NCBI RefSeq assembly: GCF_006345805.1
Contig: NC_043000.1
Location: 87,482,001 to 87,546,000, forward strand
DNA: 64,000 nucleotides
Reading direction: 5' to 3'
DNA from: Octopus sinensis
Lineage: Eukaryota
The notes under the pieces were generated by a model that saw nothing but the letters and a program-made list of their open reading frames with translations, was not told where the DNA came from and ran no database searches. This document shows, in pieces, positions 4,282-51,580 of this stretch (position 1 is its first letter; the number at the start of each line of letters is the position of its first letter). The translations under genes were made by a program, and so were the position numbers.

Positions 4282-4290
4282 CAACAACGA

Positions 4291-4503
4291 TGTTTTCTAC
4301 TCTAGGCACAAGGCCCGAAATTTTGGGGGAGAGGACCAGTCGATTAGACCGACTCCAGTATGCAACTGGTACTTAATTTATCGACCTCGAAAGGATGAAA
4401 GGCAAAGTCGACTTCGGTGGAATTTGAACTCAGAACGTAGCGACGGGCGAAATACAGCTAAGCATTTCGTCCAACGTGCTAACAATTCTGCCAGCTCACT
4501 ACC

Positions 4504-4505
<2 letters not shown>
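4291..4505 (-). mobile_element. SINE S1, full length
   Basis: Minus strand: A-box-like GAGCTGGCAGAATTGTTAG, B-box GAGTTCAAATTCC, core GACTTTGCCTTTCATCCTTTCGAGGTCGATAAATTAAGTACCAG, (GTT/ATT)n tail. The core resembles the Meta domain from memory (not verified). Confidence 0.85.
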
Positions 4506-4553
<48 letters not shown>

Positions 4554-4554
<1 letters not shown>

Positions 4555-6103
4555 GATTAGAAAAATGCGCCAAAGTAACCCTGAAAAGAGGAAAACTAGT
4601 TAAGAGTAACAACATCACACTAGATAAAACCAATGAAATAAAAGAATTAGACCAAAGCCAAACTTACAAATACTTAGGAATCCATGAACTAGATAAGACA
4701 CAACACACACAAATGAAAGAGAAAATAAAAAAAGAATATTATAGACGAGTTAGATCACTACTAAACACAGAGCTCAATGCTAAAAACAAGATAATAGGTA
4801 TCAACACTTTAGCTGTCCCAGTTATAAGTTACAGCTACAATATCCTTAACTGGACACGAAATGAACTGACCAAAATAGATAGGAAAACAAGAAAAATAAT
4901 GACAGGATCTAGGATGCATCACCCAAAATCTGACATAGAAAGACTATATATACAACGTATAGAAGGTGGTAGAGGCCTTATACAGCTGGAAAACTACTAT
5001 AAAATAACCACCATAGGACTGCAAAAATATCTACTTCAGAAGGAAGGAAAACTGATCCAGATAGCGGCAAAACACGAGCAAAAAAAATGTTCTCAGTATT
5101 TAAGGAAGCTGACAAATACAAACAAGAAATCATACCACCTAATAAACATGAAGAAGAAGAAGAAGATGAAGAAACAACAAAAGCTATAAAACAAATGAAA
5201 TCCAAACTAAAAACAGAACAGCAACGAACCATGATAAAACGATGGCAAGAAAAGCCCCTTCATGGTAAATACTGCACTAAACTAAACGCAAAAGAAATAG
5301 ACAAAGAAAAATCCCAGCAATGGTTGAGAAGCTCAGGACTCAAAGCAGAGGCAGAGGGATTTTTAATTGCAGCACAAGACCAAAGCCTCCCCACCAGAAA
5401 TTACCAAAAACATGTAATGAAAAGAAATATTACAAGTAACTGCAGAATATGTGGAGATGGACAAGAAACAATAAATCATATTATCTCTAGCTGCCCAGTC
5501 CTGGCTAAGAAGGAATATATTCACAGACATGACAGAGTTGGAACCTACATACATTGGAAGCTATGCCAACGTTATGGAATAACAACAGAAAAAAGATGGT
5601 ATAGGCACACACCAGAAAAGGTCACAGAAAACGAGAAAGCAACCATACTCTGGGATATGCCAATACACACAGATAGAGAAATTAATGCCAACAGACCAGA
5701 TATAGTTGTCAGAGATATGAAGAAAAAAAATGCTTTCTAATTGATGTATCAATACCGGCTGATGAAAACGTGTCTCTAAAAGAAATGGAGAAACTCTCAA
5801 AATACAAAGACCTGGAAATAGAGGTAACTAGAATGTGGAATCTGAAAACAGAAACAATTCCTATCATAGTAGGTGCATTAGGCATGATAAAAAAATATTC
5901 AGACAAATACATAACAAAAACACCAGGACTTACAAACACATATAACATACAGAAAATTGCACTACTAGGCACTGCACACATCCTACGCAGAACACTTTCC
6001 ATACAATAACCATCAGAGCATCACAACAAATCACAGCACATACCCAAGGCACACAGAGCTGTGCTCGGTAGTGAAGTGAAAGCACGCTATAAAAATAAAA
6101 CTA

Positions 6104-6106
<3 letters not shown>
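4554..6106 (+). mobile_element. R4/Dong-type RLE LINE, family A, 5'-truncated
   Basis: GLEKCAK..KRGK, YKYLG, HPKSDIERLY, WLRSSGLKAE, CRICGDGQETINHIISSC (CCHC knuckle), RHDRV, RPDIVV..LIDVSIP (PD-D endonuclease). About 100-nt 3'UTR; (AAT)n on both sides; two frameshifts. Confidence 0.93.
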
Positions 6107-6182
<76 letters not shown>

Positions 6183-6300
6183 TTTTCTTCTAGAGACACA
6201 AGGGCTGAGTTTTGGTGGAGGGGATAATTGATTGCACTGACGCCAGTTCTTAGCTGATACTTATTTCATTGATCCCACACTTTCCTTTTGAAGTAAAAGT
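6183..6300 (-). mobile_element. SINE S1, 3' fragment
   Basis: Matches the 3' half of 4291-4505; its tail faces the Dong-A tail across (AAT)n. Confidence 0.65.
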
Positions 6301-6428
6301 TGAAAGAAAGTCGATATGGGATATACCAAAAAGGAACGTTTCTGTTCTCGTATCTTGTTGATGCTGCAGTTGCATACATACATACATACATACATACATA
6401 CATACATACATACATACATACATACATG

Positions 6429-6514
<86 letters not shown>

Positions 6515-6515
6515 T

Positions 6516-6617
6516 ACAACGGGCTTCTTTCAGTTTCTGTCTACCAAATTCACTCGCAAGGGACTGAATACTGAACCATCTGATTTGGAAGCAAGCTTCT
6601 ACCACACAGCCATGCCT
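6516..6617 (-). mobile_element. tRNA-headed SINE family S2 (CORE-like), internally deleted fragment
   Basis: GGGCTTCTTTCAGTTTCTGTCTACCAAAT...AAGCAAGCTTCTACCACACAGCC matches 32060-32215. Confidence 0.7.
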
Positions 6618-7079: not shown

Positions 7080-7141
<62 letters not shown>

Positions 7142-7155
7142 GTAATAATAATAAT

Positions 7156-7574
7156 TTGTCAGTTGTTTCACCTTAACCAATTGAGTATGTCCCTTAGTGG
7201 CTGACGATATGTGCATCTCTGATCACGAGTAGAAGTAGTGGGGGAGCATCATAGCCATGTGTTGAGAGGGATTCTTTGGGGTTTGAATAGTTCACCTCTG
7301 GAAACATGGGTGGCTCTTTCAACATCCTTAAACAACCCTTATTCAGGGACCGTTTGAGCGGGATGGGCTACTCAACCTGAAGAAAATTCTAACTGGGCCC
7401 CACCTGCAAGGTCATGTGCTGTTTATCTTGATAAGAGATCACCATGTCGCGCACATATGGTTGTGATGCATGTGCCTAGTGTACCTTTATCAGACGGGTA
7501 GTCATGATGGGTATATTGGGCTTCGTATATTTTACCCCAGTGTGACTTTGATGGCATGAACTGCTCTCTCACTC
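7156..7574 (+). mobile_element. Non-coding element X, 5'-truncated copy
   Basis: Aligns to the last ~420 nt of 10493-11043; same 3' end CTGCTCTCTCACTC followed by (AAT)n. Confidence 0.85.
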
Positions 7575-7605
<31 letters not shown>

Positions 7606-7674
7606 TAATAATAATAATAATAATATAATAATAATAATAATAATAATAATATTAATAATAATAATGATAATTTC

Positions 7675-10190
7675 TTTATTAGCTACGGAGGTCTTACACG
7701 AAAGAAATCATTAAGGATGCCACAGAACGGTACAATGGGGGCCTTAATTCAAACAAAGTAAATTCCCTAATAGCGAGGGAGCGTCTAAGCGTTATACATG
7801 GAGAAAGCCCACAAAAATCAATGGTGCCCTCTCCCAGTCTTACCTTTCCAGTCGACAGATAGACACTCAGAATAGGTCCATTCACTCGGGCAATGCTCTC
7901 GCCTCTCTTATCCACCTTTCAGCAAAATACTTGTAAGGCAACACATCCATCTACATCCTGAATTTCCTCTTCAAGTGAAACCTGAAAAAGTGTATCAGAG
8001 TTTTGCCGAAAAGAAAAATGCTGGTCTTCACTCCTTTCAAATGTGTCCACCAGGTAAAAAAACAAAACCTCCTTGCCTTTCCCGGCTAAAGGAAGGCGGC
8101 GGGGCTATCTTCACGATGGACTCAGTTGATTGTTGGACCCATCCGACACGCGAAGGTATGTGTTCAACATAAACCTGCTAGACAGCAATGTCTGAACATG
8201 CCTGGCTGATGGTATTTCCATGTCTGTAGGGTTTATCTCAAACTGGCAATGCTCCCCGGTAGCACTGCCAGGTCAGGGATTTCTGGACATTATCCATGGG
8301 CCTTGGATCGAAAGTTCTCCGGAAAATATTGGCTAGTTGATTATCGTCGACGCCCAGAGTCTCCCCCAAGGACGTCGTTGCTTTTACCCTCCACTAACCC
8401 TCTATCGAACGACAAGATGGAGTTTCCACCCATCGTACTGCCCGACTGGTTGAGAGCTGTGAGAGCTTGGACACATTCCAGTCTCCAAATGCTCTCTTTC
8501 GGTCTTCGCTTGACCCAGGACTGCAGCTCCGCCAAGGAAACGAGCTGGGGAAATGAATGTTTAGCAAACGGTGACCACATCTGTTCATCGTCGAGAAAGA
8601 GTTGGAGATCTTGTAGCCTCAGTGCATGTCTGTGCATCATTAGCCACCGACATGCCCATCCCTCCACGCAGCGGATGTTGGCAATAAATGAACCACCTGA
8701 CCAGTGGAACCTGTCCCTTCCACAAAAAGCGAAATGCTAGCGTTCCAGTGCAGTTATACGTGTACTAGACAAGGCACTACAGTTAGGTGGTAGTGGATGT
8801 CGGACGCAATGTACGCGTTCGCCACCTCTACCCGACTTTTCAGGGATAGCTTCCTCTCAATCCATTTCTGGGTGAGAGAGGTGGAGATTGTCGTGGATGG
8901 ATCTATTTATGATGGCGCATGTCTCCACCTCTTCCCAAATCCGCCAACGACGAGCGCCAACCTCTTTGCCAAAACCTTGACCAAAACTTTAAACTCTGCA
9001 TTTAGCAGAGTTATGAGCCTAAAATCATTGCTACGGTCCCCTTGTTCGCGTCCTTCAGCAGCGCTACGGCTCCACGGCTCACAGAACTGGGAATTTTTTT
9101 TCATTCTTCTACCAGTTGCAGTAGACGTCTGCCAATAGGTCGCCGAACAAGTCTAGCATATAAACATAGAGCTCGTAGGGCAGACCATCAACACTAGGCG
9201 ATTTGTCCCTTGTGCATTCATTCGTCGTCTCCAGTATTTCAGTAGCTGCTATCGCCTTTCACAACACTCCGCTTCCATTGTTGAAAGCTTCGGCAGTCCG
9301 TCGAGGTAAGCACTAATGTCTATCTCGTGATCCGGCTCACCACTGTCTCCGAACAGTTGAGCGAAGCGTCGCTGAAAAACCGCACACATCTGCTTGGGGT
9401 CGAGTAACACGCGCCCGTCGTCGTCCGCCGAAGACTACATTGTAGTTTTGTTTTCACGGCACACCTCTTCCACTCGGGCTCATTGAATGGTTTTCATCCC
9501 CTTGTGTTTAAGAGCAAGCGCCCTAGCTTTCTTTGCGATGACGAATTGGTCGAGAGACAATCTTGCCGCAATCACGTCAGTTGCGCTGCCTTTCGTAAAA
9601 ACTCTTCTAGCTTTCTAGGCCTTTACACCCTCCTCCCCAACTGAGACCCACACAGTGCCAGCGTGAGTCTAAGATATCGTTCCAATCGTCAACTAAGATT
9701 AAAGAGCCAGACGTTTTTAGAAAGGTCGTAAGGCGCCTGACGAAATCAGGCCGTCCTGGCGGGGCAAGGACTGCCATTAGCCTGAAAGCTTAGCCTTCAT
9801 TGTTGGTCGCGTCCAGCACCACAAAATTACTTTACAGGTCCAGGAAGATAGTCTGTATGACGAGATCCAAGCCTTTCCGAAACAACACAGTGACTCCGCC
9901 TCCATATCCCAGACTACTTGGAGATTCGTACACCACGTAGATGCCGAAAGTGGATGCGAAGGCTCCTGTCCCCGAAATTCTGGTTTTGCTGATGGCCACC
10001 ACATCTATGTTCAGCAATCTGACGTCGTTAAGTAGGTGGCCCTGCTCTCAAGACGACTCCAGGGCACGTACATTCATAAAGCCTATTCTAAGTGAGGCCA
10101 TGTTAACTGAAGAGACAGAAAAGAGGAGCAAAACCACTTACCTTAGGTTTTTGGAGGAAGAGCTGTTGCTCCATCCTTGTGTCCAGTTGT
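7675..10190 (-). mobile_element. Degenerate, internally deleted L1/Tx1-like LINE (APE + RT + C-terminal region)
   Basis: APE-like LNIDVVAIS.TRI...GGGVTVLFRKGL; RT-like FRLITLLNAEFKVLVKVLAKRL; AATAAA then (ATT)n at the 3' end. Many stops and frameshifts. Confidence 0.7.
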
Positions 10191-10237
10191 GGGTTCTTTC
10201 ACGAGAATATCTGTATTATTATTATCATCATGAGATC

Positions 10238-10269
<32 letters not shown>

Positions 10270-10285
10270 GCCGCCGCCGCCGCCG

Positions 10286-10318
<33 letters not shown>

Positions 10319-10372
10319 TACTACTACTACTACTACTACTACTACTGCTACTACTACTACTACTACTACTAT
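10238..10372. repeat. (TAC)n microsatellite with (GCC)n interruption
   Basis: Read directly from the sequence. Confidence 0.95.
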
Positions 10373-10492
10373 TAATACTAATGATAGTAATGATGATGAT
10401 GATGATGATAATAATAATAATAATAATAATAATAAAATAATAATAATAATAATAATAAATGCCATGATGAGTACCAGGCAGTGGCTCTAAAT

Positions 10493-11043
10493 GCCCTGAT
10501 GCAGTACCAGGCAGTGGCTCTCATGGCTTCTGATCTTAACTGATTGGAAGTGTTATCATGTTCATTGTTTTGTCTTGGTATAAAATATGGGCTACAGCAA
10601 ATATTCTGCTCAGTACCACAGACTTGCTTGTCAGTTGTTTGACCTTAACCAGTTGATCATGTCCCTTAGTGGCTGACGATATGTGCATCTCTGATCACGA
10701 GTAGAAGTAGTGGGGGAACATCAAAGCCATGTGTTGAGAGGGATTCTTTGGTGTTTGAATAATTCACCTCTGGAAGAAAGTGTTTCGTTCAACATCCTTA
10801 AACAACCCTTCTTCAGGGACCTTTTGAGCGGGATGAGTTACTCGACTAGAAAAAATTCTAACTGGGTCCCACCAGCAAGGTCATGTGCTGTTTATCTTGA
10901 TATGAGATCACCATGTCGCGCACACATGGTTGTGGTGCATGTGCCTAGTGTACCCTTATCAGACGGGTAGTCATGATGGGTATACTGGGCTTCGTATATT
11001 TTACCCCAGTGTCACTTTGATGGCATGAACTGCTCTCTCACTC
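10493..11043 (+). mobile_element. Non-coding element X, full length (551 nt)
   Basis: Starts GCCCTGATGCAGTACCAGG and ends CTGCTCTCTCACTC; (AAT)n on both flanks. A partial duplicate of the head lies at 10461-10488. Confidence 0.88.
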
Positions 11044-11056
11044 AATGATAATAATA

Positions 11057-11091
<35 letters not shown>

Positions 11092-11137
11092 TAATAATAA
11101 TAAATGCCATGATGAGTACCAGGCAGTGGCTCTAAAT

Positions 11138-11688
11138 GCCCTGATGCAGTACCAGGCAGTGGCTCTCATGGCTTCTGATCTTAACTGATTGGAAGTGTTA
11201 TCATGTTCATTGTTTTGTCTTGGTATAAAATATGGGCTACAGCAAATATTCTGCTCAGTACCACAGACTTGCTTGTCAGTTGTTTGACCTTAACCAGTTG
11301 ATCATGTCCCTTAGTGGCTGACGATATGTGCATCTCTGATCACGAGTAGAAGTAGTGGGGGAACATCAAAGCCATGTGTTGAGAGGGATTCTTTGGTGTT
11401 TGAATAATTCACCTCTGGAAGAAAGTGTTTCGTTCAACATCCTTAAACAACCCTTCTTCAGGGACCTTTTGAGCGGGATGAGTTACTCGACTAGAAAAAA
11501 TTCTAACTGGGTCCCACCAGCAAGGTCATGTGCTGTTTATCTTGATATGAGATCACCATGTCGCGCACACATGGTTGTGGTGCATGTGCCTAGTGTACCC
11601 TTATCAGACGGGTAGTCATGATGGGTATACTGGGCTTCGTATATTTTACCCCAGTGTCACTTTGATGGCATGAACTGCTCTCTCACTC
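11138..11688 (+). mobile_element. Non-coding element X, second unit of a 645-bp tandem duplication
   Basis: Appears identical to 10493-11043 at offset 645; the ORF translations at 10710 and 11355 are identical. Confidence 0.88.
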
Positions 11689-11705
11689 AATGATAATAAT
11701 AATAA

Positions 11706-11890
11706 TCTTTTCTACTAATGGCACAAAGCCTGAAATCCTGGGAGGGGGCTAGTCGATTACATCGACCCCGGTGGGTAACTGGTACTTACTTCATGGACCC
11801 CGAAAGGATGAAAGGTACTAAGCATTTTGCCCGGACGAAATGGTGCTAAGCATTTTCCCCTGAATGCTAAAGACTGTCAGTTTGCGGACT
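11706..11890 (-). mobile_element. SINE S1, degenerate
   Basis: Contains AGTCGATTACATCGACCCCGG..AACTGGTACTT..CCCCGAAAGGATGAAAGG. Confidence 0.75.
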
Positions 11891-13425: not shown

Positions 13426-13430
<5 letters not shown>

Positions 13431-14674
13431 ACTGACCAAAATAGATAGGAAAACAAGAAAAATAATGACAGGATCTAGGATGCATCACCCAAAATCTGAC
13501 ATAGAAAGACTATATATACAACGTATAGAAGGTGGTAGAGGCCTTATACAGCTGGAAAACTACTATAAAATAACCACCATAGGACTGCAAAAATATCTAC
13601 TTCAGAAGGAAGGAAAACTGATCCAGATAGCGGTAAAACACGAGCAAAACAAAAAACTGTTCTCAGTATTTAAGGAAGCTGACAAATACAAACAAGAAAT
13701 CATACCACCTAATAAACATGAAGAAGAAGAAGAAGATGAAGAAACAACAAAAGCTATAAAGCAAATGAAATCCAAACTAAAAATAGAACAGCAACGAACC
13801 ATGATAAAACGATGGCAAGAAAAGCCCCTTCATGGTAAATACTGCACTAAACTAAACGCAAAAGAAATAGACAAAGAAAAATCCCAGCAATGGTTGAGAA
13901 GCTCAGGACTCAAAGCAGAAATAGAGGGATGTTTAATTGCAGCACAAGACCAAAGCCTCCCCACCAGAAATTACCAAAAACATGTAATGAAAAGAAATAT
14001 TACAAGTAACTGCAGAATATGTGGAGATGGACAAGAAACAATAAATCATATTATCTCTAGCTGCCCAGTCCTGGCTAAGAAGGAATATATTCACAGACAT
14101 GACAGAGTTGGAACCTACATACATTGGAAGCTATGCCAACATTATGGAATAACAACAGAAAAAAGATGGTATAGGCACACACCAGAAAAGGTCACAGAAA
14201 ACGAGAAAGCAACCATACTCTGGGATATGCTGATACACACAGATAGAGAAATTAAGGCCAACAGGCCAGATATAGTTGTCAGAGATCATGAAGAAAAAAA
14301 ATGCTTTCTAATTGATGTATCAATACCGGCTGATGAAAACATGTCTCTAAAAGAAATGGAGAAACTCTCAAAATACAAAGACCTGGAAATAGAGGTAACT
14401 AGAATGTGGAATCTGAAAACAGAAACAATTCCTATCATAGTAGGTGCATTAGGCATGATAAAATAATATTCAGACAAATACATAACAAAAACACCAGGAC
14501 TTACAAACACATATAACATACAGAAAATTGCACTACTAGGCACTGCACACATCCTACGCAGAACACTTTCCATACAATAACCATCAGAGCATCACAACAA
14601 ATCACAGCACATACCCAAGGCACACAAAGCTGTGCTCGGTAGTGAAGTGAAAGCACGCTATAAAAATAAAACTA

Positions 14675-14677
<3 letters not shown>
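13426..14677 (+). mobile_element. R4/Dong LINE family A, 5'-truncated
   Basis: Same CCHC/RHD/PD-D motifs and 3'UTR as 4554-6106; preceded by (GAT)n(AAT)n and followed by (AAT)n; stop codon in GMIK*YS. Confidence 0.93.
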
Positions 14678-14917: not shown

Positions 14918-16254
14918 TATAAGTACTTGGGGATATGGGAAATGGATAAATTGATGGAGAAAGAAATGAGAGAAAAATTTAAAGTGGAGTACTTGAGCAG
15001 ACTAAGACTGATCCTTAAGTCAAAATTAAAAGGACGGAATAAGATTGAAGCTACCAACACCTGGGAGGTTTTACTACTTAGATAAGGAGCAGGGGTAATC
15101 GCATGGACAGTAGACGAACTAAACAGATTGGACAGAAAGACAAGGAAGTTGCTGAGTAGATATGTGATACTCCATCCAAAAAGTGACACAGACAGACTGT
15201 ATGTACCAAGAAAAAAGAGGGGGAAGATGATTGATTGGATGCGAACACAACATTAGTGCAGAGGAAAATAACATGGTATGATATGTTAAACATGCCATAG
15301 AAACACTAATTTTGGAAGCAAGAAGGTTAGCCTTGTGTAGTGTAGGATGGAAGATTTCAAAGATAAAGCATTGTACAAGAAATTGAGAATGAATGAAACT
15401 GAAAATAGATGGATAAAGAAAAGAGTGCATGAAAATTTCATAGAGATGTTAAACATAAAAGTGACAAAGAAAAGAGATGGCTATGGATGACTGGAAGTGA
15501 TATAAAACCAGAAACGGAGGCTCTAATCTGTGCTGTCAAAGAGAAAGCATTATGATCCAATTACATCAAATACTGAATAAACAACACATCAAAAGTAATA
15601 AGTGCAGAATTTGTGGACAAAATGGTGAAACCGTATGGAATATTAACAATCAATGCACGCCACTAGCCTAGAAAGAATATAAGAGACGTCATAACAATAT
15701 AGCCAGGCTTGTCCATTGGAAACTTTGCAAGAAGTATGGACTTGACAGAGTAAAAAATTGGTACGAACGTAAACCCGAAGGCATCATCAAGAATGATAAT
15801 GCAAATATCCTATGAGATTTTATGATTTAGTGCAACCATGCGATAGAGAATAGGAAACCAGACTTAGTGTTAATTGAGAAAGAAAGCAAACGATGCTGGA
15901 TCATAGATATAGCATGCCCAGTTAACAACAAGGTATGCGATAAGGAAGAAAGAAAAGTCGATAGATATGACAGATTAGCTTGGGAGGTGAAGCACTTGTG
16001 TTTGATGAAAATGGTGGTAGTAGTACCAATAATTGTCAGAGCCCTGGGAACAGTGAGTAAAAATCTGGAGAACTACATGGAATAAATAGGGGCTACAATA
16101 AGGATGGAGCACTTGCAGGAAACAGCACTGCTTGGAACCGCTTGAATATTCCGGATGGTGCTCGAAAAATAAGGGGTGTTGCCTTAGTTCACTGGTAGTG
16201 AAAAGCTGGCACCATAGTACATCTCCAGCGTTAGAAGCTGTGGAAAGACAATGG
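14918..16254 (+). mobile_element. R4/Dong LINE 3' portion (family D/E), degenerate
   Basis: YKYLGIWEMDKLMEKEMREKFK...HPKSDTDRLY, CRICGQNGET, KPDLVLIEK..WIIDIACP, 3'UTR, (AAT)n tail at 16255-16410. Confidence 0.85.
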
Positions 16255-16410: not shown

Positions 16411-18707
16411 CCATTTCCAAAATCTCAAAGTACTTTTAGCCCGTCTCTTCTATCTGCTTCATAAACCCCCCACCTCCACCGACGGTATCGTGAGTCCGTC
16501 CATATATTTGATTTTATCTCTCTTCAAGACTAACACACCACACTTTTCAGTGCGAACTCCATTCTGATACCTGCACTCAAAGTATACACCATATCAGCGA
16601 GGGAACTGACTTGGGATTCATCTTTACCATAAAGTTTGAGGTCATCCATGAATAACAAATGGCTGACATTTTGTTGGCGGCTTTTGAATACATACCCAGC
16701 TATTGCTTTCCTCAGAATCAGTGTTAGTGGTATCAAGCACAGTACAAAGATCACTAGGAACAGGCAGTCTCCTTTGAAGATGCCCCCTCTAATTTCTGCC
16801 GTTTCTAAACTTCTTCCGTATGCTGTCAGATCCGTCCTCGAATTCGCCATACATTTTCCAAGCAATCGCTCAACATTCGATGCAATACCAAATAGTTTCA
16901 TACATTCCATAATCCAAGAATGTGGGATCATATTCTACGCCTTACGATAGTCGATGGCTAAGTTACTTTTCCTCCTCTTGCAGTCTCTAAGTATACTTTT
17001 CTCTCTCAGGAGTTGATCCTTGGTACCTCTGCACTTACGCTTGCAACCCTTCTGCTCATGTGGCAGGACTCCATTTTTATCCAGATGTTCGTATTTTGAT
17101 TCTACGGGTATTCCAGTCAATAACTTTCCCATAAGTGGCAAACAGGATATCAGCCTGTAATTGTCTACCGTATTGCCTTTCCCGCTGTTTTTCAAGCACA
17201 GAATTGTCCTACCCAATGTCAACCACTCTGGTGTTACTTGGTCGGCATTTAATAAGGTGTTGAGTTGCGCAACTATTCGTGCATGACGTTCATGAAATCT
17301 TTTGAAGCAGTAGCCTTGAACTCCATCTGGTCCTGGGGCCTTCCAGTTGCTCATTTTTTTGTTGATTTCCTTCACATCCCTAACCGATATGACTAGTTCT
17401 GCCTGTTTTGGACAGACTACTGTTTGTTTCAGTTCTTGCAACCATTCAGCATCCTTCTTGTGCTCCTTTTCTTTGCTCCAGATGACACTCCAAAACTTTT
17501 GACTTTCATAGTTATCTAGTATCAACTTTTCATCTGTACACTCTCTATTTATTTATTTATAGAAACTCTTCTGATCTACTCTGAATAATCTATTCTGGCG
17601 GTAACCCTTCATTCTTTGGTCGTTTCTTACTATATTCGCTTCCTTTGCAACGAGTCACTGTTTCAGTTCCTCCATCACCAATTTCCGACCCTTTCTATAT
17701 TGTCTATATGTATTTTGTATATTATACTTCCTTTTCAGTACCCTGTATGTTTGTTCGCTTTTAGGTCTAACACAGAGATTTCCTTCGAGAGCATGTCTAA
17801 CCCTGCCTGTATTTTTCTTTTCTACCATGGATCTTTTCTTTTGTCACTTCCATTATGTTTCTTTCTCTTGACATCAACGCCCACGTTTCTACTACAACAA
17901 TACTTGCTGCTTTGATCAAATTACTTGTTTCTGTGCTGTTGTTTGTTCTAATGTATTTCAGAATTTCATTGAGATTTTTAACTTCTTGGTTCAATTTCCA
18001 TCGATCAACCTTTTTAAGGTTGTAAATAATGTCACTATCTTGCTCCTGTAGTCTTGCCTTTATTCTGTCGTAGATTGCCTTTTGTTCATCTGTCATGTCA
18101 CCATTAGTTTTATTGTCTTCTTTTTGATCATCTATATGTCTCATGAAGTAAACTACCACTGCTCCTTTCCTGTGCTATGGGATTACTCATATTAGTAAGA
18201 ACTGTAATTTTATCGTTATCTCTGCTTCTATTTTCCAAGACCCGTTTTTTGATAGCTTCGAGCTCTACTTCTGTGAACGAACGATTTTTCTTATTACTCT
18301 AGCTTGAACACATAGTCTCTGTTCCGTAAGTTAAAACAATCCCTTTTCTCTCCAGTGATCATACATACGTTGTCAGTAACCCCTATTTTCATCTACCGGG
18401 CTGCTCGGGTAGTAACACTCCATGACCACAGCATTAATTTACTTGCTCCATCTACGCCGTGTGTGGTGCTGCCGTTCTGGATATCGACGACCTGGAGCCT
18501 GACCAGAGTCTCTGAGCATGCCGGGTGGAACACTGTCACCATCAATGGCTTCAGTTTCATGACCATCGTTATTCACAATATTTTGTTTATTCATTGTCAA
18601 TCATTTGAGGTAGCGATTATCAGGTTGCGCAATTACCAGTGTTTTTATTGTGACACCATCACTAGATGTATCATTAATCAGTCCAGGGGTGCTCTACCAG
18701 TTTCCTT

Positions 18708-18709
<2 letters not shown>
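16411..18709 (-). mobile_element. R4/Dong LINE family D, 5' portion to RT, 3'-truncated
   Basis: N-terminal RRRWSK.IN.VVMECYY..P.DENRGY..MYDHWREKG..TEQRL; WKAPGPDGVQG; YRLISCLP; IDYRKA; LLFMDDLKLY; ends at KYFEILEM. Confidence 0.88.
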
Positions 18710-23633
<4,924 letters not shown>

Positions 23634-25099
23634 ATCATCATCATCATCATCATCATCACTGATGTCACTGATATTATTGTTTTCATGTGTAGTAGCAGCA
23701 GTGGTTGCAGCAACAGCAACAGTAGCAGGGGTGGGGTTGTGGTAAGAATGGTAGTTGGGCTTTATGTTCATGTGCTATCATAATAGTAGTATCTGTAGCA
23801 TAAGCAGCTGCTCATATTATTATTAATATTATTATTTTTATCAGTATCACCATCACCACCGTTACCGTTGTTTTCATCGTCATTACCATTTCCATTTATT
23901 ATTAAACGATTTTACTAAATGTTCTTTATTTTGAACTTTTGTCTTGTACTTTTCATAGTCATAAATATGTGGATGTTGATGGAACCAGTTTTGTAGCAGC
24001 TTGGTGAATAGATCATATTCTACAGGTCTCTAAATAGATTCGGCAGATGGTGGGGAGGTCAGCCATAGAGACAAAGGAATCTTCGCACCCTTTGGATCAG
24101 CAGAGGTCAAATGTGTTTACTACTACTAGTCACCACTGAGAGCGCTGCCTTGGAAAGAAGCAATTCAACCTGTTCTATTTGTAATTACTGCTATAAAACG
24201 CAATAATACACACACACACAGATACATATATACTGATATTCACGTCATTGAATTTATTGTTCCTTTGTTTCAGGTTTACTTATGATATTTACTTCAACAA
24301 TTAGAAAACTAAAGATTTGTTCACGATGACGATTCTCAACATTTCTAGGGAATTAGACATAAATTGATTAACATGAATTTTCTAGACGTAATTAAATATT
24401 CTAAATTTGATTAATGAGATTAACATAAATGTTCTAAACATGATTAATCAGATTAACATAAATTCCCCCAAGATAACTGCAGCTTTAAAGCTGAAACATT
24501 TTAAAGAGTTTTTAAAAAACAGAAATTAAAGAGGTTAACCTAAATGTTCTAGATAGATTAATTAGATTAACGTGAATATCTTCTATATAATAAAATAGAT
24601 TAGCATAACTTTTCTAAACACAAATACAGTACTGTAATTTACTAGAGATAGTATATTGTGTAATTGATGTATATAGTTAAAAGAAAAGCCTTTATGAAGG
24701 TAATTTACCAGTAAAAAGACACAAAGACGACATATTGCATTAGCCTACATAGATTGTTGTTAAAGCTTCTATCACATTTCAAGAAATCTCAGATTATTTT
24801 CTCTCTTCCATTTGATAAGAAGCTTTCCTAAAATATAAAAGCAGCATTAAACATGCTATGTAGGATAATATTGTATCTTGTCTTAGTTTTTATTTATTGG
24901 CATCACTATCCATAATTTACCTAAATTTTCACTTGCATTTCTTAAAGAACATAAAAATATTTCTACCAGACTAGCATTAACTTTCTAGACATTATTAAAA
25001 AGATCAAAACTTTGGTATACATAATTAAGACAGTATTTAGTTAAAATAGTCATCCATGTATCATACGTAACGTATGCATACTGTCAATGGCCCATTTAC

Positions 25100-25460
25100 G
25101 GTTACAATACCTGTAATTGTAGGAGCACTTGGAGTGATAAAAAAAAAGGAACTGAATATTATTTAAGAATGATTCCTGGCTTACCATCCATGCAGGAAGT
25201 GCAAAAGAATGCCTTAACTGGTATGTCACATGTACTGAGAACAGCATTGTCGCCGTGAATTTCCTTTCCTTTTATTTTCTTTGTTTACTTTTTAATTTTT
25301 CATTTTTTCCGTTTTTTCTCTATCCTTTTCCCTCCTTTTTCTTTATCATATCAAATAGTAAATGAACAATCTGGCGTGTTTATTTTAATGGCTTTCCACT
25401 GTATACAGTGTGTTTCTCTGCCTTAGATGTTAGGAAGAGATTTGACATGAAATGGAAACA

Positions 25461-25461
<1 letters not shown>
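25100..25461 (+). mobile_element. R4/Dong LINE family B, 3' fragment
   Basis: VTIPVIVGALGVIK..MIPGLPSMQEVQK..TGMSHVLR; 3'UTR homologous to 50820-50910; (AAT)n tail. Confidence 0.8.
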
Positions 25462-26192: not shown

Positions 26193-26266
<74 letters not shown>

Positions 26267-26269
<3 letters not shown>

Positions 26270-26538
26270 CCCCAAAATGGCAGAAATTCAAAAGATAGTG
26301 CTCATGGGAACTGCTCATATCCTACGCAAAATACTCTCTATGTAATCCCAAGGTTTAAAACAAACTTTTTATTTATTTATTTATTTATTTATTTTTTTTT
26401 TTTTTATGTATTAGACATTCACTAGTACAACACCCCCCCCCAAGTATATGGCACAGAACTTCCAACCTGTTGTCTCTTGAGGTTTCTGGGTGAGACTTGG
26501 AGCCAACTTGTACAGACATAAAGCAAAAGTCAAACATA

Positions 26539-26540
<2 letters not shown>
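26267..26540 (+). mobile_element. R4/Dong LINE family C, 3' end
   Basis: PKMAEIQKIVLMGTAHILRKILSM* plus ~195-nt 3'UTR; (AAT)n on both sides; homologous to 28707-29165 (minus). Confidence 0.85.
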
Positions 26541-27894: not shown

Positions 27895-28300
27895 AACTGG
27901 CAGAATTGTTACCGCACCGGACGAAATGCTTAGCAGCATTTCTTCCGACTTTACGTTCCGAGGTCAAATGCAGCCGGTATCTACTTAGTCTTTCATTTGT
28001 TCAGGGTCAATAAAATAAGTGCCAGTTGAACACTGGGGTCGATGTAATCAAATTTTCCCCTCTTCCGAAATTGTTAGCTATTATGCAGAATAAAGTAGCA
28101 AATGGGTGGAATCATTGGTTCGGTAGACAAAAGTATTTAGCAGTATTTCTTGCTCTCTCTCTCTCTCCCTCTCTCTCTCTCTTTCTCTCTCTTTCTCAGA
28201 GTTCAAATTACGCCGAGATCGACTTTGCCTTTTATCATTTCAGTGTCGATAAAGTCACGCTTGAATCCTAACCTTCCAAATTTCAGGCCTTGTGCCCATA
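27895..28300 (+). mobile_element. Two SINE S1 pieces (27895-28060, 28195-28300)
   Basis: GGCGAACTGGCAGAATTGTT head; second piece GAGTTCAAATTACGCCGAGATCGACTTTGCCTTT. Confidence 0.7.
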
Positions 28301-28309
28301 GCAGAAAGG

Positions 28310-28352
<43 letters not shown>

Positions 28353-28389
28353 TCATTATTATTCGGGATCGATGAATTAAGTACCAGTG

Positions 28390-28640
28390 ATTCACTCAAC
28401 AAACGGCTATGATGCTCCCCCACTACTTCTACTCGTGATCAGAGATGCACATATCGTCAACCACTAAGGGATATGCTCAACTGGTTATGGTCAAACAACT
28501 GACAAACAAATCTGTGATATTGGGCAGAATATTTGCTGTAGCCCATCTTCTATACCAAGTCAAAACAATGTACATGATAACACTTCCAGTCAGTTAAACT
28601 CAGAAGCCATGAGAGTCACAGCCTGGCACTGCATCAGGAC
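28390..28640 (-). mobile_element. Non-coding element X, 5' half, inverted
   Basis: Reverse complement starts GTCCTGATGCAGTGCCAGG immediately after (AAT)n on the minus strand; the 3' half is missing. Confidence 0.82.
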
Positions 28641-28706
<66 letters not shown>

Positions 28707-28708
<2 letters not shown>

Positions 28709-29165
28709 TATGTTTGACTTTTGCTTTATGTGTATGCAAGTTGGCTCCAAGTCTCACCCAGAGACCTCAAGAGACAGCAGGTTGGAAGTTCTGTGCCATA
28801 TATTTGGGGTTTTTTTTTTGTGTTGTACTAGTGAATGTCTAATACATAAAAAAATAATAAATAAATAAATAAAATAAAATAAAATAAAATAAATAAATAA
28901 ATAAATTTAAAAAAAGTTTGTTTTAAACCTTGGGATTACATAGAGAGTATTTTGCGTAGGATATGAGCAGTTCCCATGAGCACTATCTTTTGAATTTCTG
29001 CCATTTTGGGGTTTCCTGGTATCTGAGTTAGGTAGCAATTATTCCCTTTCGCTATCATTCCCAGGGCACCTATGACAACAGGTATTGTTTTAGTCTTCAG
29101 CTTCCACATTTTGCTGTCAAGATCTTTATATTTGCTCAGTTTTTGGTAGGTCTTGACAGATACGT
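28707..29165 (-). mobile_element. R4/Dong LINE family C, 5'-truncated
   Basis: LSKYKDLDSKMWKLKTKTIPVVIGALGMIAK..PKMAEIQKIVLMGTAH; (AAT)n on both sides. Confidence 0.87.
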
Positions 29166-30069: not shown

Positions 30070-30108
30070 TTATTATTGTTGTTGTTATTATTATTATTAT
30101 TATTATTG

Positions 30109-30167
<59 letters not shown>

Positions 30168-30169
<2 letters not shown>

Positions 30170-31324: not shown

Positions 31325-31389
<65 letters not shown>

Positions 31390-43500: not shown

Positions 43501-43841
43501 GGTCTCAACTCCCCCCCTCCTCATCTAAAACCCCCTCTCCCCCCTCCTCACCTATCCTTTCCCCCCCGACCCCTACTTCTTCAGTCCTTCATCCTTTCAC
43601 CCCTACTCCCCTTCCTTCTTCCCTCTTTCTCCCTCCCTCTTCCCCTTCCCTCTGCTCCCTCACTCCCTCTCTCCCCTTCTCTCTCTCCCCCTCTCCCTCT
43701 TTCCTCCTTCATCCCCCTCCTCACCTTCCTTCTCCCCCATCGTCTCCTCTTCCCCCTTCTCCTCCCCCTCTTCTTCCCTCTCCTTCTCTCCCCTTCTCTC
43801 CCCCTCTTCTCCCCCTCCCCCTCTTCTCCTCACTACACCAC

Positions 43842-44508: not shown

Positions 44509-44532
44509 TTATATATATATATATATATATAT

Positions 44533-48317: not shown

Positions 48318-48901
<584 letters not shown>

Positions 48902-48942
48902 ATAATAATAATAATAATAATAATAATGATGATGATAATAAA

Positions 48943-49081: not shown

Positions 49082-49084
<3 letters not shown>

Positions 49085-50932
49085 GAATTTTTCAAGGTGA
49101 CTCACTTTCACCTTTAATATTCTGCATAGCCCTAATACCCCTTACAAGTGAATTAAACAGAACAGGGTATGGGTATAAAATTGCCAATAAAAAATAAGCC
49201 ATCTATTTTATATGGATGACTTAAAACTTTATGGTAAAGACAATAATGAACTTGAAGGCCTATTGCGCACGTGAAAGCATTCAGCGATGACATCGGGATG
49301 GAGTTTGGACTTGAGAAGTGTGCCAAGGCCACTTTCCAGAAAGGGAAAGTGAAGACCACAAATTCAGTCGTGTTAGATGTTGACACAGTCATAAGAGAGC
49401 TTGAGCAAGAACAAACATACAAATATTTAGGGATAAATGAAGGCTCTGGTATTCAGCATGCAAGCATGAAAGAGAAAATCAGGAAGGAATGTTATAGGAG
49501 TGTTCGTGCAGTCCTGAAATCTGAACTAAATGCACGTAACAAGGTGTTAGCTATAAATTCCTTAGCAGTTCCAGTTGTTACTTATAGCTACAGTGTGTTG
49601 AACTGGAATATGAGTGAAGTAAAGAATATAGATAGAAAAATACGCAAGCTGCTGAGTTGTAATAGGATGCACCACCCAAAGGCAGACGTAGATCGCCTTT
49701 ACCTTCCCAGAGCCCAAGGAGGTTGAGGCCTGATCCAATTTGAACTAGCTTACAAAACAACCACAATTGGACTGGCCAAATATCTCGAAATATCGAATGA
49801 CTGGATGCTAAAGCTCGTGGAAAATCACGAGAGACGAAAGAAGCTTCATTCTATCATAAAGGAAAGCAAAAAATTTGCTATTGATCTCGTGCAGGATACC
49901 CAAACTGAACAACCCGAGGGAAGTACGGCAACTATTGTTACAAAGAAGGTGAAAATGATGGCAATGAAAAAAGCGCACGAGCAATTGGCTGTTAGGTGGG
50001 AGGAGAAACCTCTGCACGGCAAATATGTGACCCGCAGCAAACAAGCTGATGTTGACCAGAAGCAAACCCATCAGTGGTTACGGAGCTCAGGGCTAAAAGC
50101 AGAGAGCGAAGGTTTCATCCTGGCTGCTCAAGATCAAAGCCTATTAACCCGGAACTACCAGGCCAATGTGATGAAAAATGGAGCAGACCCAAAATGCCGA
50201 TTCTGCAACGACATGATTGAAACAGTGGACCACCTAATCTCTGGATGTAAAGTCTTAGCACCAGTGGAGTATAAATTAAGACATGACAGAGTTGGCCAAT
50301 ATCTCCACTGGCTAATAAGTCGGCATTACAATATCAAAACTGCCGACAAGTGGTATAATCACCACCCTGAGGCTGTAACTGAAGGAGAAAATGTAACCAT
50401 TCTGTGGGACTTTCCAGTACATACAGACCGAACCATCAAGGCCAATAAACCAGATATTGTTGTGAAAGACCAAAACAATAAAGTTTGCTTATGATCGACA
50501 TGAGCATCCCGTGTGATCATAATATCTCAGCGAAAGAGTTTGACAAGCTCAGAAAATATAAAGACCTACTCATTGAAATTGAGAAAATGTGGCATCTCAA
50601 GGCGGTTACAATACCAGTGATCGTAGGAGCACTAGGAATGATCAAGAAGGGAACCGAAAATTATATGAGAATGATCCCTGGCTTACCATCCCTGCAAGAA
50701 GTGCAAAAGATTGTCTTAACTGGTACAACACACGTATTGAGAAGAGCATTGTCGATGTGAGAACTGTTGCTGCTCATGTATTTTAATTTAACTTAAAAAA
50801 AAAAAAAAAAATGAACGAACTACTGAGTTTGGTTTAATGGCCTACAAATGTATACTATGAGTTTCTTTGCCATAGGAGTCGGGAAGACACTCGGCAAGAA
50901 ATGGAAGCAGATTTGAAAGAAGAAAAAAAAAA

Positions 50933-50934
<2 letters not shown>
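49082..50934 (+). mobile_element. R4/Dong LINE family B, 5'-truncated
   Basis: GIFQGDSLSPLIF, YMDDLKLY, FGLEKCAK, HPKADVDRLY, CRFCNDMIETVDHLISGC, RHDRV, KPDIVV; 3'UTR; (AAT)n on both sides; several stops. Confidence 0.93.
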
Positions 50935-50992
<58 letters not shown>

Positions 50993-51544
50993 GCCCTGAT
51001 GCAGTACCAGGCAGTGGCTCTCATGGCTTCTGATCTTAACTGATTGGAAGTGTCATCATGTACATTGTTTTTTTTTCTTGGTATAAAAGATGGGCTACAG
51101 AAAATATTCTGCTCAATACCACAGATTTGCTTGTCAGTTGTTTGACCATAACCAGTTGAGCATGTCCCTTAGTGGCTGACAATACGTGCATCTCTGATCA
51201 CGAGCAGAAGTAGTGGGGGAGCATCCTAGCCATGTGTTGAAAGTGATTCTTTGGAGTTTGAATAATTCACCTCTGGAAACATAGGTGTTTCGTTCAACAT
51301 CCTAAAGCAACCCTGTTCAGGGACCTTTTGAGCAGGATGGGCTACTCGATCTGAAGAAAATTCTAACTGGGCCCCACCTGCAAGGTCACGTGCTGTTTAT
51401 CTTGATATGAAATCACCACGTCGCGCACATATGGTTGTGATGCATGTGCCTGGTGTACCCTTATCAGACGGGTAGTCATGATGGGTATGCTGGGCTTCGT
51501 ATATTTTACCCCAGTGTCACTTTGATGACATGCACCGCTTTCTC
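50993..51544 (+). mobile_element. Non-coding element X, full length
   Basis: Same 5' start GCCCTGATGCAGTACC; ends CCGCTTTCTC then (AAT)n. Confidence 0.88.

Positions 51545-51580
<36 letters not shown>

What the first reader, a model, noticed from the sequence alone, without database searches (positions are those of the whole stretch)
10493..11043. Element X: ~551-nt non-coding retroposon with no clear Pol III head, inserted in (AAT)n with Dong polarity
Seen: six copies (7156, 10493, 11138, 28390 inverted, 48425, 50993). Three independent copies start at the same point (G(C/T)CCTGATGCAGT). All copies that keep the 3' end finish at CTGCTYTCTC(ACTC) followed by (AAT)n, and two are truncated only at the 5' side. 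Every copy reads on the AAT strand, as do the Dong LINEs. There is no conserved recognisable protein and no convincing tRNA A/B box pair. A stem ACTGGG...CCCAGT lies near the 3' end. Known: a constant 3' end with variable 5' truncation is the signature of target-primed reverse transcription (TPRT), and Bombyx Dong (R4 clade) targets (TAA)n. Inference: X is a non-autonomous passenger of an R4/Dong RLE enzyme with an unknown promoter or 5'-processing mechanism. Its 3' end matches none of the Dong 3'UTRs seen here.
Basis: partly seen in the sequence, partly recalled or inferred. Interest (0 to 1): 0.8.

Follow-up and report, generated by a model that had tools for sequence, protein, structure and literature searches.

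The report
Octopus (AAT)n-targeting non-coding retroposon family
Element X is a real non-coding repeat of about 551 nt in an octopus genome that sits only inside (AAT)n microsatellites, in one orientation and often cut short at its 5' end, just like the neighbouring Dong-type LINEs; it most likely borrows their enzyme, but which LINE copies it and how it is transcribed are not shown.

Summary
BLAST and profile searches find exactly six X copies at the stated places. Five keep the same 3' end followed by (AAT)n, and two are truncated only at the 5' side. Four start at G(C/T)CCTGATGCAGT, and all lie in (AAT)n in AAT polarity.

- The copies at 10493 and 11138 are identical (0 differences in 554 columns), so there are five independent insertions, not six.
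- Both of those copies carry an extra 29-nt restart of the head upstream.
- The favoured 3' fold is a 48-nt hairpin (X451-498, dG -28.4, z -6.7), not ACTGGG/CCCAGT.

X has no conserved ORF, no tRNA or Rfam match, conserved T4+ runs that argue against Pol III, and no terminal inverted repeats. It shows no similarity to any LINE in the window. Those LINEs are RLE-type (RT, then CCHC, then a PD..D..K motif; the closest solved structures are R2 proteins). They belong to at least four families with the same target, polarity and truncation pattern.

X-derived ORFs occur in Octopus bimaculoides, and a 77%-identical copy occurs in another sequencing run.

The best reading is a non-autonomous element copied by target-primed reverse transcription (TPRT), using Dong/R4-like LINE enzymes. 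The partner LINE, the promoter and any 5' processing remain unshown. No HDV-like ribozyme was found. Interest is moderate to low.

The parts
7156..7574 (+). X copy c1. It is 5'-truncated (starts at X~189), keeps the intact 3' end ...CTGCTCTCTCACTC, and is flanked by (AAT)n at 7081-7155 and 7575-7650.
10460..10488 (+). Partial head of c2: a 29-nt restart of X positions ~1-29, followed by AAAT and then the full element.
10493..11043 (+). X copy c2, full length (551 nt); this is the finding's interval.
10943..10990 (+). 48-nt imperfect hairpin (X451-498) lying 53 nt from the 3' end. dG is -28.4 kcal/mol and z is -6.7. It is kept in c1, c5 and c6, where every substitution in the stem preserves pairing through G-U.
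11105..11133 (+). Partial head of c3, identical to that of c2.
11138..11688 (+). X copy c3. It is identical to c2 (0 mismatches in 554 columns) and has the same first 15 nt of tail, AATGATAATAATAAT.
28371..28640 (-). X copy c4. Its 5' end is full length and preceded by (AAT)n (28641-28707) and the 3' end of LINE3. Its 3' part is lost at X~255-278 next to SINE fragments.
48425..48903 (+). X copy c5. It is 5'-truncated (starts at X~127) and has the 3' end ...CTGCTTTCTCAT followed by (AAT)n.
50993..51546 (+). X copy c6, full length. It lies 57 nt of (AAT)n downstream of the 3' end of LINE2.
18782..22766 (-). LINE1c, a near full-length (3,985 bp) RLE-type LINE with broken ORFs. Its first 18 nt (AGAGAGTGAACACCGGGG) are duplicated in tandem at the 5' terminus. 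Its 3' end is ...AAAACTACTG followed by (AAT)n.
4554..6106 (+). LINE1a, a 5'-truncated copy of LINE1 (98% identical to LINE1c), with (AAT)n on both sides.
13429..14677 (+). LINE1b, a 5'-truncated copy of LINE1 in (AAT)n.
49084..50934 (+). LINE2, a 5'-truncated RLE LINE of a second family. Its C-terminal part is 48% identical in amino acids to that of LINE1. It ends ...AAAAAAAAGT followed by (AAT)n, and c6 follows directly.
28708..29014 (-). LINE3b, the 3' fragment of a third family, ending ...GTCAAACATAG followed by (AAT)n. It lies directly upstream of c4. A homologous fragment lies at 26266-26539 (+).
17783..18709 (-). LINE4, the 5' part of a fourth LINE family. It starts (GAAAGGAAACTGG...) right after the (AAT)n tail of LINE1c. 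A homologue lies at 46617-47515 (+).

Best explanation
X is a family of non-autonomous, non-coding non-LTR retroposons of octopus genomes. New copies are made by target-primed reverse transcription (TPRT) inside (AAT)n microsatellites, most likely in trans by the enzyme of the Dong/R4-like RLE LINEs that share the same arrays.

**Proposed cycle**
- Shown: the end product. Each copy is (AAT)n, then X (full length or 5'-truncated), then (AAT)n, always in one polarity.
- Inferred: an X RNA that ends in an (AAU)n tail is bound by the LINE protein, probably through the 48-nt 3' hairpin together with the tail.
- Inferred: the restriction-like endonuclease nicks the (TTA)n strand. The nick primes the cDNA. 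Early termination gives the 5'-truncated copies.
- Inferred: when the RT reaches the RNA 5' end it sometimes jumps to an internal site of another X RNA. This creates the heads that restart at position 1.
- Inferred: transcription is not by Pol III. It is by Pol II or by read-through from upstream elements, and the way the 5' end is defined is unknown.
For: 1. There are five independent insertions. All have (AAT)n on both sides in AAT polarity. The chance of this is about 1e-7, given 3.9% array coverage.
2. Five copies share a constant 3' end. Truncated 5' ends lie at X~189 and X~127, and three independent copies share one 5' terminus. This is the classical TPRT signature.
3. At least four LINE families in the window show the same anatomy: 5' truncation, (AAT)n on both sides, and the same polarity.
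4. These LINEs are RLE-type. They have RVT_1, a CCHC motif and an RPD..D..K motif, with no APE domain and no N-terminal zinc finger. R2 proteins are the nearest solved structures.
5. Dong elements target TAA repeats in Bombyx, Anopheles and a snail (PMC3812793), with (TAA)n upstream of the sense strand (PMC3774820).
6. Dong-R4 LINEs are abundant and recently active in Octopus vulgaris (PMC13282606).
7. Duplications that restart at position 1 occur in X c2/c3 (29 nt) and in a related X copy from another run (L003, about 73 nt). O. bimaculoides ORFs show the same (CIRALANLWY against CIRAFRATAWY in c2), and so does LINE1c (18 nt). This points to a common integration machinery.
8. X is non-coding and has no tRNA or Rfam match. 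T4-T9 runs at X~75, ~325 and ~505 are conserved in all copies and would stop Pol III.
9. The 3' hairpin is strongly structured (dG -28.4, 0 of 500 shuffles as stable).
10. The family is old and widespread. Eleven O. bimaculoides UniRef ORFs derive from X. Logan contigs L003 and L004 carry X preceded by (AAT)5(AAC)3 and by TAATAATAAAA.
Against: - X shows no sequence similarity to the 3'UTR, 5'UTR or coding part of any LINE in the window (blastn-short, tblastx and nhmmer --max). The usual proof of a SINE/LINE or SIDE/LINE partnership is therefore missing.
- The LINE families also share no 3'UTR similarity with each other, so recognition rules cannot be read from the sequences.
- No promoter or 5'-processing element was identified.
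- The sample is small: five independent copies from one 64-kb LINE-rich region, plus a few biased external glimpses.
- One O. bimaculoides copy (P0123) has only about 9 nt of AT-rich sequence upstream of the X start, not a long array.
- R4-clade membership of the LINEs was not tested by phylogeny.
Confidence: 0.68

Rival explanations
1. X is a non-autonomous retroposon, but its driver is a different LINE that is not in this window. One example would be an APE-type element whose RNA ends in (TAA)n, as the Drosophila I element does. Insertion into (AAT)n would then come from base pairing of the tail with AT-rich nick sites.
For: The I element ends in TAA repeats (PMC3747384). X shares no sequence with the Dong-like LINEs present.
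Against: No APE-type LINE ending in (AAT)n is present in the window. All nine or more LINE fragments that end in (AAT)n are RLE-type. X shows no target-site duplications beyond the microsatellite. X shares the terminal restart duplications with LINE1c.
Confidence: 0.12
2. X is only the 3' part (a UTR) of a longer element, and the 'full-length' copies are truncations at a hotspot.
For: Two O. bimaculoides ORFs (P0128, P0130) read past the X start into a shared sequence, ALANLWY.
Against: That extension is homologous to the partial head of c2 (RAFRATAWY against RAL-ANLWY). It is therefore a restart of X itself, not new upstream sequence. Three independent window copies, L003 and P0123 all begin at CCTGATG directly after (AAT)n or AT-rich sequence.
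Confidence: 0.05
3. X spreads at the DNA level. Units of X plus (AAT)n would be amplified by unequal crossing-over or segmental duplication between microsatellite arrays, without an RNA step.
For: c2 and c3 are adjacent and identical, as expected for a tandem duplication of a 646-bp unit.
Against: The other copies are dispersed in unrelated contexts, differ by about 9-11%, and have different 5' truncation points joined directly to (AAT)n. The spacer between c2 and c3 does not carry the point irregularities of the array upstream of c2. That fits two insertions from one master at least as well as a duplication.
Confidence: 0.05
4. X is a non-autonomous Helitron/Helentron-like or other DNA transposon that inserts at AT-rich sites.
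For: X has a hairpin in its 3' region and inserts in A/T sequence.
Against: The ends are not 5'-TC / CTRR-3'. The hairpin lies 53 nt from the end, not 10-12 nt. There are no terminal or subterminal inverted repeats. The strict single polarity relative to AAT and the 5' truncation series fit TPRT.
Confidence: 0.03

Closest known systems
R2 SIDEs (short internally deleted elements) of Drosophila: non-autonomous parasites of the RLE LINE R2 (described in PMC3774820, which cites PMC3414825)
   Same: They are non-coding and have no Pol III head. They are copied by a site-specific RLE-type LINE into that LINE's own target, in the same orientation.
   Different: SIDEs keep the parent's 5' HDV-like ribozyme and its 3'UTR sequence. 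X shows neither a ribozyme nor any similarity to the co-resident LINEs. The target here is a microsatellite, not 28S rDNA.
Dong (R4 clade), the (TAA)n-specific LINE of Bombyx, Anopheles and Biomphalaria
   Same: X has the same target repeat and the same polarity: (TAA)n lies upstream of the sense strand and at the 3' end. X shows TPRT-style 5' truncation and co-resides with Dong-like LINEs in the same arrays.
   Different: X encodes nothing and is about 0.55 kb rather than 4-5 kb. Bombyx Dong has a proven 5' self-cleaving HDV-like ribozyme (PMC3774820); none was detected in X.
Canonical SINEs, including the tRNA-derived octopus SINEs
   Same: X is short, non-coding and high in copy number, has a simple-repeat tail and depends on a LINE.
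   Different: X has no tRNA/5S/7SL head and no LINE-derived tail in the window, and it has conserved internal T4-T9 runs. The tRNA-type SINE copies in this window lie in the opposite polarity relative to (AAT)n.

Membership tests
Canonical Pol III SINE | 5' head derived from tRNA, 5S or 7SL (or snRNA), with an internal promoter | tested here: not met
   ARAGORN finds 0 tRNA genes. Rfam finds 0 matches at the gathering threshold and 0 at E<=10 on 10430-11060. Only a partial A-box-like AGGCAGTGG is present, with no B box at proper spacing (read directly from the sequence).
Canonical Pol III SINE | Body free of Pol III terminators (T4 or longer) | tested here: not met
   Conserved TTTT runs lie at X~75 (T9 in c6), ~325 and ~505 in all copies.
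Canonical Pol III SINE | 3' tail shared with a partner LINE, or a simple-repeat tail | tested here: inconclusive
   An (AAT)n tail is present. No similarity to any LINE 3'UTR in the window was found. The rest of the genome could not be searched.
SIDE-type derivative of an RLE LINE | 5' end identical to the parent LINE 5' end (an HDV-like ribozyme) | tested here: not met
   No similarity to the 5' ends of LINE1c or LINE4. No Rfam ribozyme match. A home-made HDV-like descriptor gave 0 hits and had only a synthetic positive control. A parent LINE outside the window was not testable.
SIDE-type derivative of an RLE LINE | 3'UTR identity with the parent LINE | tested here: not met
   blastn-short, tblastx and nhmmer --max against all LINE fragments in the window found nothing above chance.
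SIDE-type derivative of an RLE LINE | Same target site and orientation as the LINE | tested here: met
   All X and all LINE copies lie in (AAT)n in AAT polarity.
TPRT-made non-LTR retroposon (general) | Constant 3' end with variable 5' truncation, and no terminal repeats | tested here: met
   See the alignment. No terminal inverted repeats were found.
R4/Dong clade (applies to the neighbouring LINEs, not to X) | A single ORF with an RT followed by CCHC and a PD-(D/E)XK restriction-like endonuclease, and no APE domain | tested here: met
   Pfam finds RVT_1 and zf-RVT, with no Exo_endo_phos domain. The CX2C...HX4C and RPD..D..K motifs are present. R2 proteins are the best PDB hits across the RT and the C-terminal domain.
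R4/Dong clade (applies to the neighbouring LINEs, not to X) | Insertion in (TAA)n in sense polarity | tested here: met
   Shown. The polarity of Bombyx Dong comes from the primer and cleavage product described in PMC3774820.
R4/Dong clade (applies to the neighbouring LINEs, not to X) | Phylogenetic placement of the RT within R4 rather than HERO, R2 or NeSL | not tested
   No named reference sequences were available. The homologues found are unnamed.
Helitron / Helentron non-autonomous element | 5'-TC and CTRR-3' ends, a hairpin 10-12 nt from the 3' end, and subterminal inverted repeats (Helentron) | tested here: not met
   The ends are GCCCTG... and ...CACTC or ...CTCAT. The hairpin ends 53 nt from the 3' end. 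No inverted terminal repeats were found.
Already described repeat (Repbase, Dfam, SINEBase) | Sequence match to a curated consensus | not testable with these tools
   No repeat library was available. The paper searches found no description of such an element. O. vulgaris is reported to have 893 recently active unclassified SINE families (PMC13282606), so X may be catalogued but unnamed.

The most novel reading that the evidence does not exclude
X is a headless retroposon unrelated to any LINE and independent of Pol III. It captures the Dong-type RLE reverse transcriptase through only a 3' hairpin plus an (AAU)n tail. Its 5'-terminal restart duplications, also seen in the LINE, are in-vivo footprints of end-to-end template jumping by that enzyme. 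The identical c2/c3 pair would mean the family is still active in an animal whose Dong-R4 LINEs are reported as transcribed in the brain.
Probability: 0.22. Interest if true: 0.55.

Novelty: new variant of a known kind. Interest (0 to 1): 0.33.

Why it matters
If the partnership is real, X would be a microsatellite-specific counterpart of the R2 SIDEs: a passenger of an RLE-type LINE that shares no sequence with its driver. That would help define what a Dong-type enzyme actually recognises in its RNA template, whether structure plus a repeat tail or the 3'UTR sequence. This bears on current efforts to use R2-like enzymes for targeted insertion. It would also explain part of the large 'unclassified SINE/unknown' repeat fraction of octopus genomes. 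It shows how (AAT)n arrays act as shared landing pads where LINEs, X and SINEs pile up. For most readers, though, it is an ordinary finding: one more non-autonomous retroposon family.

Tried and rejected
- **DNA scans for X.** An exact-pattern scan for a conserved 31-mer of X found 0 hits in metagenome contigs and 0 in viral contigs.
- **Rfam.** The whole window gave 0 hits at the gathering threshold. X gave 0 hits at E<=10. The LINE 5' ends gave only chance hits. and the first LINE1c descriptor scan used a wrong 5' coordinate for LINE1c; both were redone.
- **HDV-like ribozyme.** A home-made double-pseudoknot descriptor gave 0 hits within +/-15 nt of the 5' ends of X, LINE1c and LINE4. It did find a synthetic control, and it hit 48% of shuffled sequences. 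An HDV-like fold is therefore not supported. No natural ribozyme was used as a control.
- **Hammerhead ribozyme.** CUGAUG(C/A) at the X start resembles the hammerhead core, but no Rfam hammerhead model matches. This idea was rejected.
- **Conserved 5' structure.** The predicted 100-nt 5' domain is not supported by the changes seen in c4, L003 or L004 (compared by eye).
- **Finding X through translated ORFs.** Searching with ORFs translated from X found octopus hits. The UniRef entries have no contigs on record. Only two short Logan contigs could be fetched, so no genome-wide census was possible.
- **Species of the related data.** A literature look-up of GCA_024449705, JAANSU and SRR7158634 gave nothing useful.
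- **Shared 3' hairpin at a fixed distance.** LINE1, LINE2 and LINE3 have small stems ending about 42 nt from the tail. The X hairpin ends 53 nt from the tail and is much larger. This is too weak to claim.

Full report
**What is there.** The window is eukaryotic, AT-rich and full of microsatellites and interspersed repeats.

A BLAST of 10440-11060 against the window finds six copies of the element. Profile searches (nhmmer --max) built from the full element and from its 5', middle and 3' thirds find the same six copies and two short partial heads, and nothing else.
- c1, 7156-7574 (+).
- c2, 10493-11043 (+).
- c3, 11138-11688 (+).
- c4, 28640-28371 (-).
- c5, 48425-48903 (+).
- c6, 50993-51546 (+).

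In the alignment, c2, c3, c4 and c6 begin at G(C/T)CCTGATGCAGT. c1 begins at X~189 and c5 at X~127. The five copies that keep the 3' region end either at CTGCTCTCTCACTC (c1, c2, c3) or at C(T/C)GCTTTCTCAT (c5, c6), followed directly by (AAT)n. c4 loses its 3' part at X~255-278, next to fragments of a tRNA-type SINE.

Every 5' junction also abuts (AAT)n, and the element always reads on the AAT strand. Arrays of at least five AAT units cover only 3.9% of the window. Five independent insertions all inside them would happen by chance with p of about 1e-7.

**Corrections to the observation.**
- c2 and c3 show no difference over 554 aligned columns, whereas all other pairs differ by JC 0.09-0.12. 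They also share the first 15 nt of tail, AATGATAATAATAAT. They are either a tandem duplication of an X-plus-spacer unit or two very recent insertions from one master. Either way there are five independent events, not six. The spacer between them lacks the point irregularities of the array upstream of c2, which mildly favours two insertions. This is not decisive.
- c2 and c3 each carry, upstream of the full element, a 29-nt partial head (10460-10488 and 11105-11133). It restarts at element position 1 and is joined to the full element by AAAT.
- The stem ACTGGG...CCCAGT is present. However, folding prefers a 48-nt imperfect hairpin, GCCUAGUGUACCC...GGGUAUACUGGGC (X451-498, window 10943-10990). 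Its dG is -28.4 kcal/mol, z is -6.7, and none of 500 shuffles is as stable. The four substitutions that fall in this stem in c1 and c6 all keep pairing through G-U. This is weak support, about 1 in 16.
- The whole element is only moderately structured (z -1.8 and -2.9).

**X is non-coding and has no recognisable head.**
- No ORF is conserved. The longest stop-free stretches differ between copies.
- ARAGORN finds no tRNA in the whole window.
- Rfam finds nothing at gathering thresholds and nothing even at E<=10 on X alone. That search covers tRNA, 5S, 7SL, snRNAs, hammerhead and HDV-like families.
- Conserved T4 runs lie at X~75 (T9 in c6), ~325 and ~505. They would terminate Pol III, so Pol III transcription of the full 551 nt is unlikely (established property of Pol III; inference).
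- There are no terminal inverted repeats.

**The neighbours.** The window holds at least four families of LINE fragments that end in (AAT)n in the same polarity.
- LINE1: 4554-6106, 13429-14677, 22766-18782 and 23633-22874. Copies are about 98% identical, and LINE1c is near full length at 3,985 bp with broken ORFs.
- LINE2: 49084-50934, with a relative at 25099-25461.
- LINE3: 26266-26539 and 29014-28708.
- LINE4: 18709-17783 and 46617-47515.

Their pieces hit RVT_1 and zf-RVT and no APE domain. The LINE1 C-terminal piece shows CX2C...HX4C followed by RPDIVV...IDV...K, the restriction-like endonuclease pattern. The N-terminal piece has no zinc finger. The nearest solved structures for both the RT and the C-terminal domain are R2 retrotransposon proteins. 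LINE1 and LINE2 share 48% amino-acid identity in the C-terminal part, so they are distinct families of one group. Their truncated copies are joined to (AAT)n at the 5' side exactly as X c1 and c5 are. X copies c6 and c4 lie directly downstream of the tails of LINE2 and LINE3.

**Organism and distribution.**
- An antisense 50-aa ORF of X hits seven 'uncharacterized proteins' of Octopus bimaculoides at 67-90% identity.
- A profile of another antisense frame hits three O. bimaculoides entries and two Logan contigs from run SRR11869384.
- The window is thus from an octopus, and X is a family shared among octopods.
- The LINE1 piece has homologues all over Metazoa. Its best hits are only 90% and 76% identical, so the window's own genome is not in the protein collection.
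- L003 carries an X homologue at about 77% identity. It is preceded by (AAT)5(AAC)3 and has two head units of about 73 nt, both starting at position 1. Its 3' part is replaced at X~460 by a 5'-truncated LINE that entered at a TTAATAAT site.
- L004 is an old X fragment preceded by TAATAATAAAA.
- Among the O. bimaculoides ORFs, P0124 shows a 5'-truncated X joined to poly-Ile, which is (ATT)n read in antisense.
- P0123 shows the same X start preceded by about 9 nt of AT-rich sequence.
- P0128 and P0130 read ...CIRALANLWY, homologous to c2's ...CIRAFRATAWY. This is the same partial-head restart as in c2/c3. These ORFs survive repeat masking, so they are a biased sample.

**What the literature adds.**
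- Dong elements target TAA microsatellites in Bombyx, Anopheles and the snail Biomphalaria (PMC3812793).
- Bombyx Dong sits downstream of (TAA)n in sense orientation. It has a 5' HDV-like ribozyme that cleaves at the element's 5' end.
- R2 has non-autonomous SIDEs made of the ribozyme plus the 3'UTR (PMC3774820).
- The RLE LINE clades are CRE, R2, R4, NeSL and HERO, and some HERO families are also microsatellite-specific (PMC4640811).
- Dong-R4 LINEs are abundant in cephalopods (PMC8967140). In O. vulgaris they are recently active (5 families, 1,129 insertions), alongside 893 recently active unclassified SINE families (PMC13282606).
- The I element ends in TAA repeats (PMC3747384), which keeps a non-Dong driver possible.
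- I found no paper describing a non-autonomous partner of Dong.

- X against all LINE fragments in the window gives nothing above chance, by blastn-short, tblastx and nhmmer. The statement that the 3' end matches no Dong 3'UTR here is therefore correct. For the same reason the standard proof of partnership is missing.
- The HDV-like ribozyme idea was tested in two ways: Rfam at E<=10, and a permissive home-made double-pseudoknot descriptor. The descriptor finds a synthetic control and hits 48% of shuffled sequences. It gives no hit within +/-15 nt of the 5' ends of X (three copies and the partial head), LINE1c or LINE4.
- The LINE 5' ends also give no Rfam ribozyme. Because the LINEs themselves are negative, this says little about X specifically.

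Full-length copies of both X and the LINE carry tandem duplications that restart exactly at position 1: 29 nt in c2/c3 and in the O. bimaculoides copies, about 73 nt in L003, and 18 nt in LINE1c. Independent duplications of different length that all restart at the terminus are what end-to-end template jumping of the reverse transcriptase at the RNA 5' end would produce. Template jumping is a known property of the R2 enzyme; this rests on my own knowledge of the Bibillo and Eickbush work and was not checked here. This links X and the LINE to a common integration machinery, although 5' promoter-unit duplication is an alternative.

**Most likely mechanism.** X is a non-autonomous non-LTR retroposon made by TPRT inside (AAT)n, most likely by Dong/R4-like RLE LINE enzymes (confidence about 0.68). 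The anatomy of the insertions and their identity with the anatomy of the LINE insertions are shown. RNA recognition through the hairpin plus the (AAU)n tail, priming at a nick in (TTA)n, template jumping, and Pol II or read-through transcription are inferred. The rivals are:
- a different LINE with a (TAA)n tail as the driver (0.12);
- a fragment of a longer element (0.05);
- DNA-level amplification (0.05);
- a Helitron-like element (0.03).

**Verdict.** This is a real, neatly behaved repeat family. It works like an R2 SIDE or a SINE but fails the defining tests of both: no Pol III head, no parental ribozyme and no LINE-derived tail, at least within this window. That makes it a new variant of a known kind rather than something categorically new. 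It may already sit unnamed in octopus repeat libraries, which I could not check. Interest is about 0.33.

Noticed in passing
window 4290-4505, 6182-6300, 11704-11870 and the region around 28250-28370: Copies of a tRNA-type SINE (…GGCACAAGGCCTGAAAT…ACTGGTACTTA…CGACCCCGAAAGGATGAAAGG…) lie antisense next to (AAT)n, so in SINE sense their 3' ends are followed by (GTT)n/(ATT)n. This is the opposite polarity to X and the LINEs. SINE tails may seed the arrays that Dong-like LINEs and X then use. ARAGORN calls none of them a tRNA. From memory they resemble the common octopus SINE; this was not tested.
   Followed up: partly
window 22731-22766 (-), the 5' end of LINE1c: The first 18 nt of the near full-length LINE (AGAGAGTGAACACCGGGG) are present twice in tandem, right after the (AAT)n tail of the upstream LINE1 copy. 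This is the same kind of terminal restart as in X c2/c3.
   Followed up: partly
window 4554-6106, 13429-14677, 18782-22766, 22874-23633: The four LINE1 copies are 92-98% identical (the three longer copies about 98%, the 22874-23633 copy about 93%). They are arranged head to tail through shared (AAT)n arrays, which suggests a recently active Dong-like family. The longest copy has its ORF broken into at least five pieces.
   Followed up: partly
window 39327-44518: Two direct repeats of about 700 bp (95% identical, each containing a 121-bp tandem repeat) flank a C-rich segment of about 3.8 kb (GC ~50-53%, GC skew to -0.57) with long + strand ORFs. One ORF has a weak GIY-YIG hit (E=0.006). It may be a Penelope-like element with pseudo-LTRs, or another composite repeat.
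   Followed up: partly
L003 (Logan SRR11869384), reverse strand positions ~560-1105: A 5'-truncated LINE homologous to window 15680-16202 has inserted into an X copy at a short TTAATAAT site. This suggests that only two or three TAA units are enough as a target.
   Followed up: no
window 10179-10400 and 6370-6520: Long compound microsatellites lie next to the X and LINE arrays: (ACT)n, (GAT)n and (AAT)n upstream of c2, and (CATA)n, (CA)n and (TA)n downstream of LINE1a.
   Followed up: no
window 18574-18629 (-): Inside the LINE4 5' region there is a weak Rfam match to the plant C/D-box snoRNA Z103 (24.5 bits against a gathering score of 44, E=0.018 in a 431-nt search). It is probably chance.
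   Followed up: no
window 31325-31447 (-) and 30087-30227 (-): Two more unrelated sequences end directly at (AAT)n in AAT polarity (…CACGCTAAAATTT and …AAGGCACTGCCTT). They may be the 3' ends of further families that use (AAT)n.
   Followed up: no
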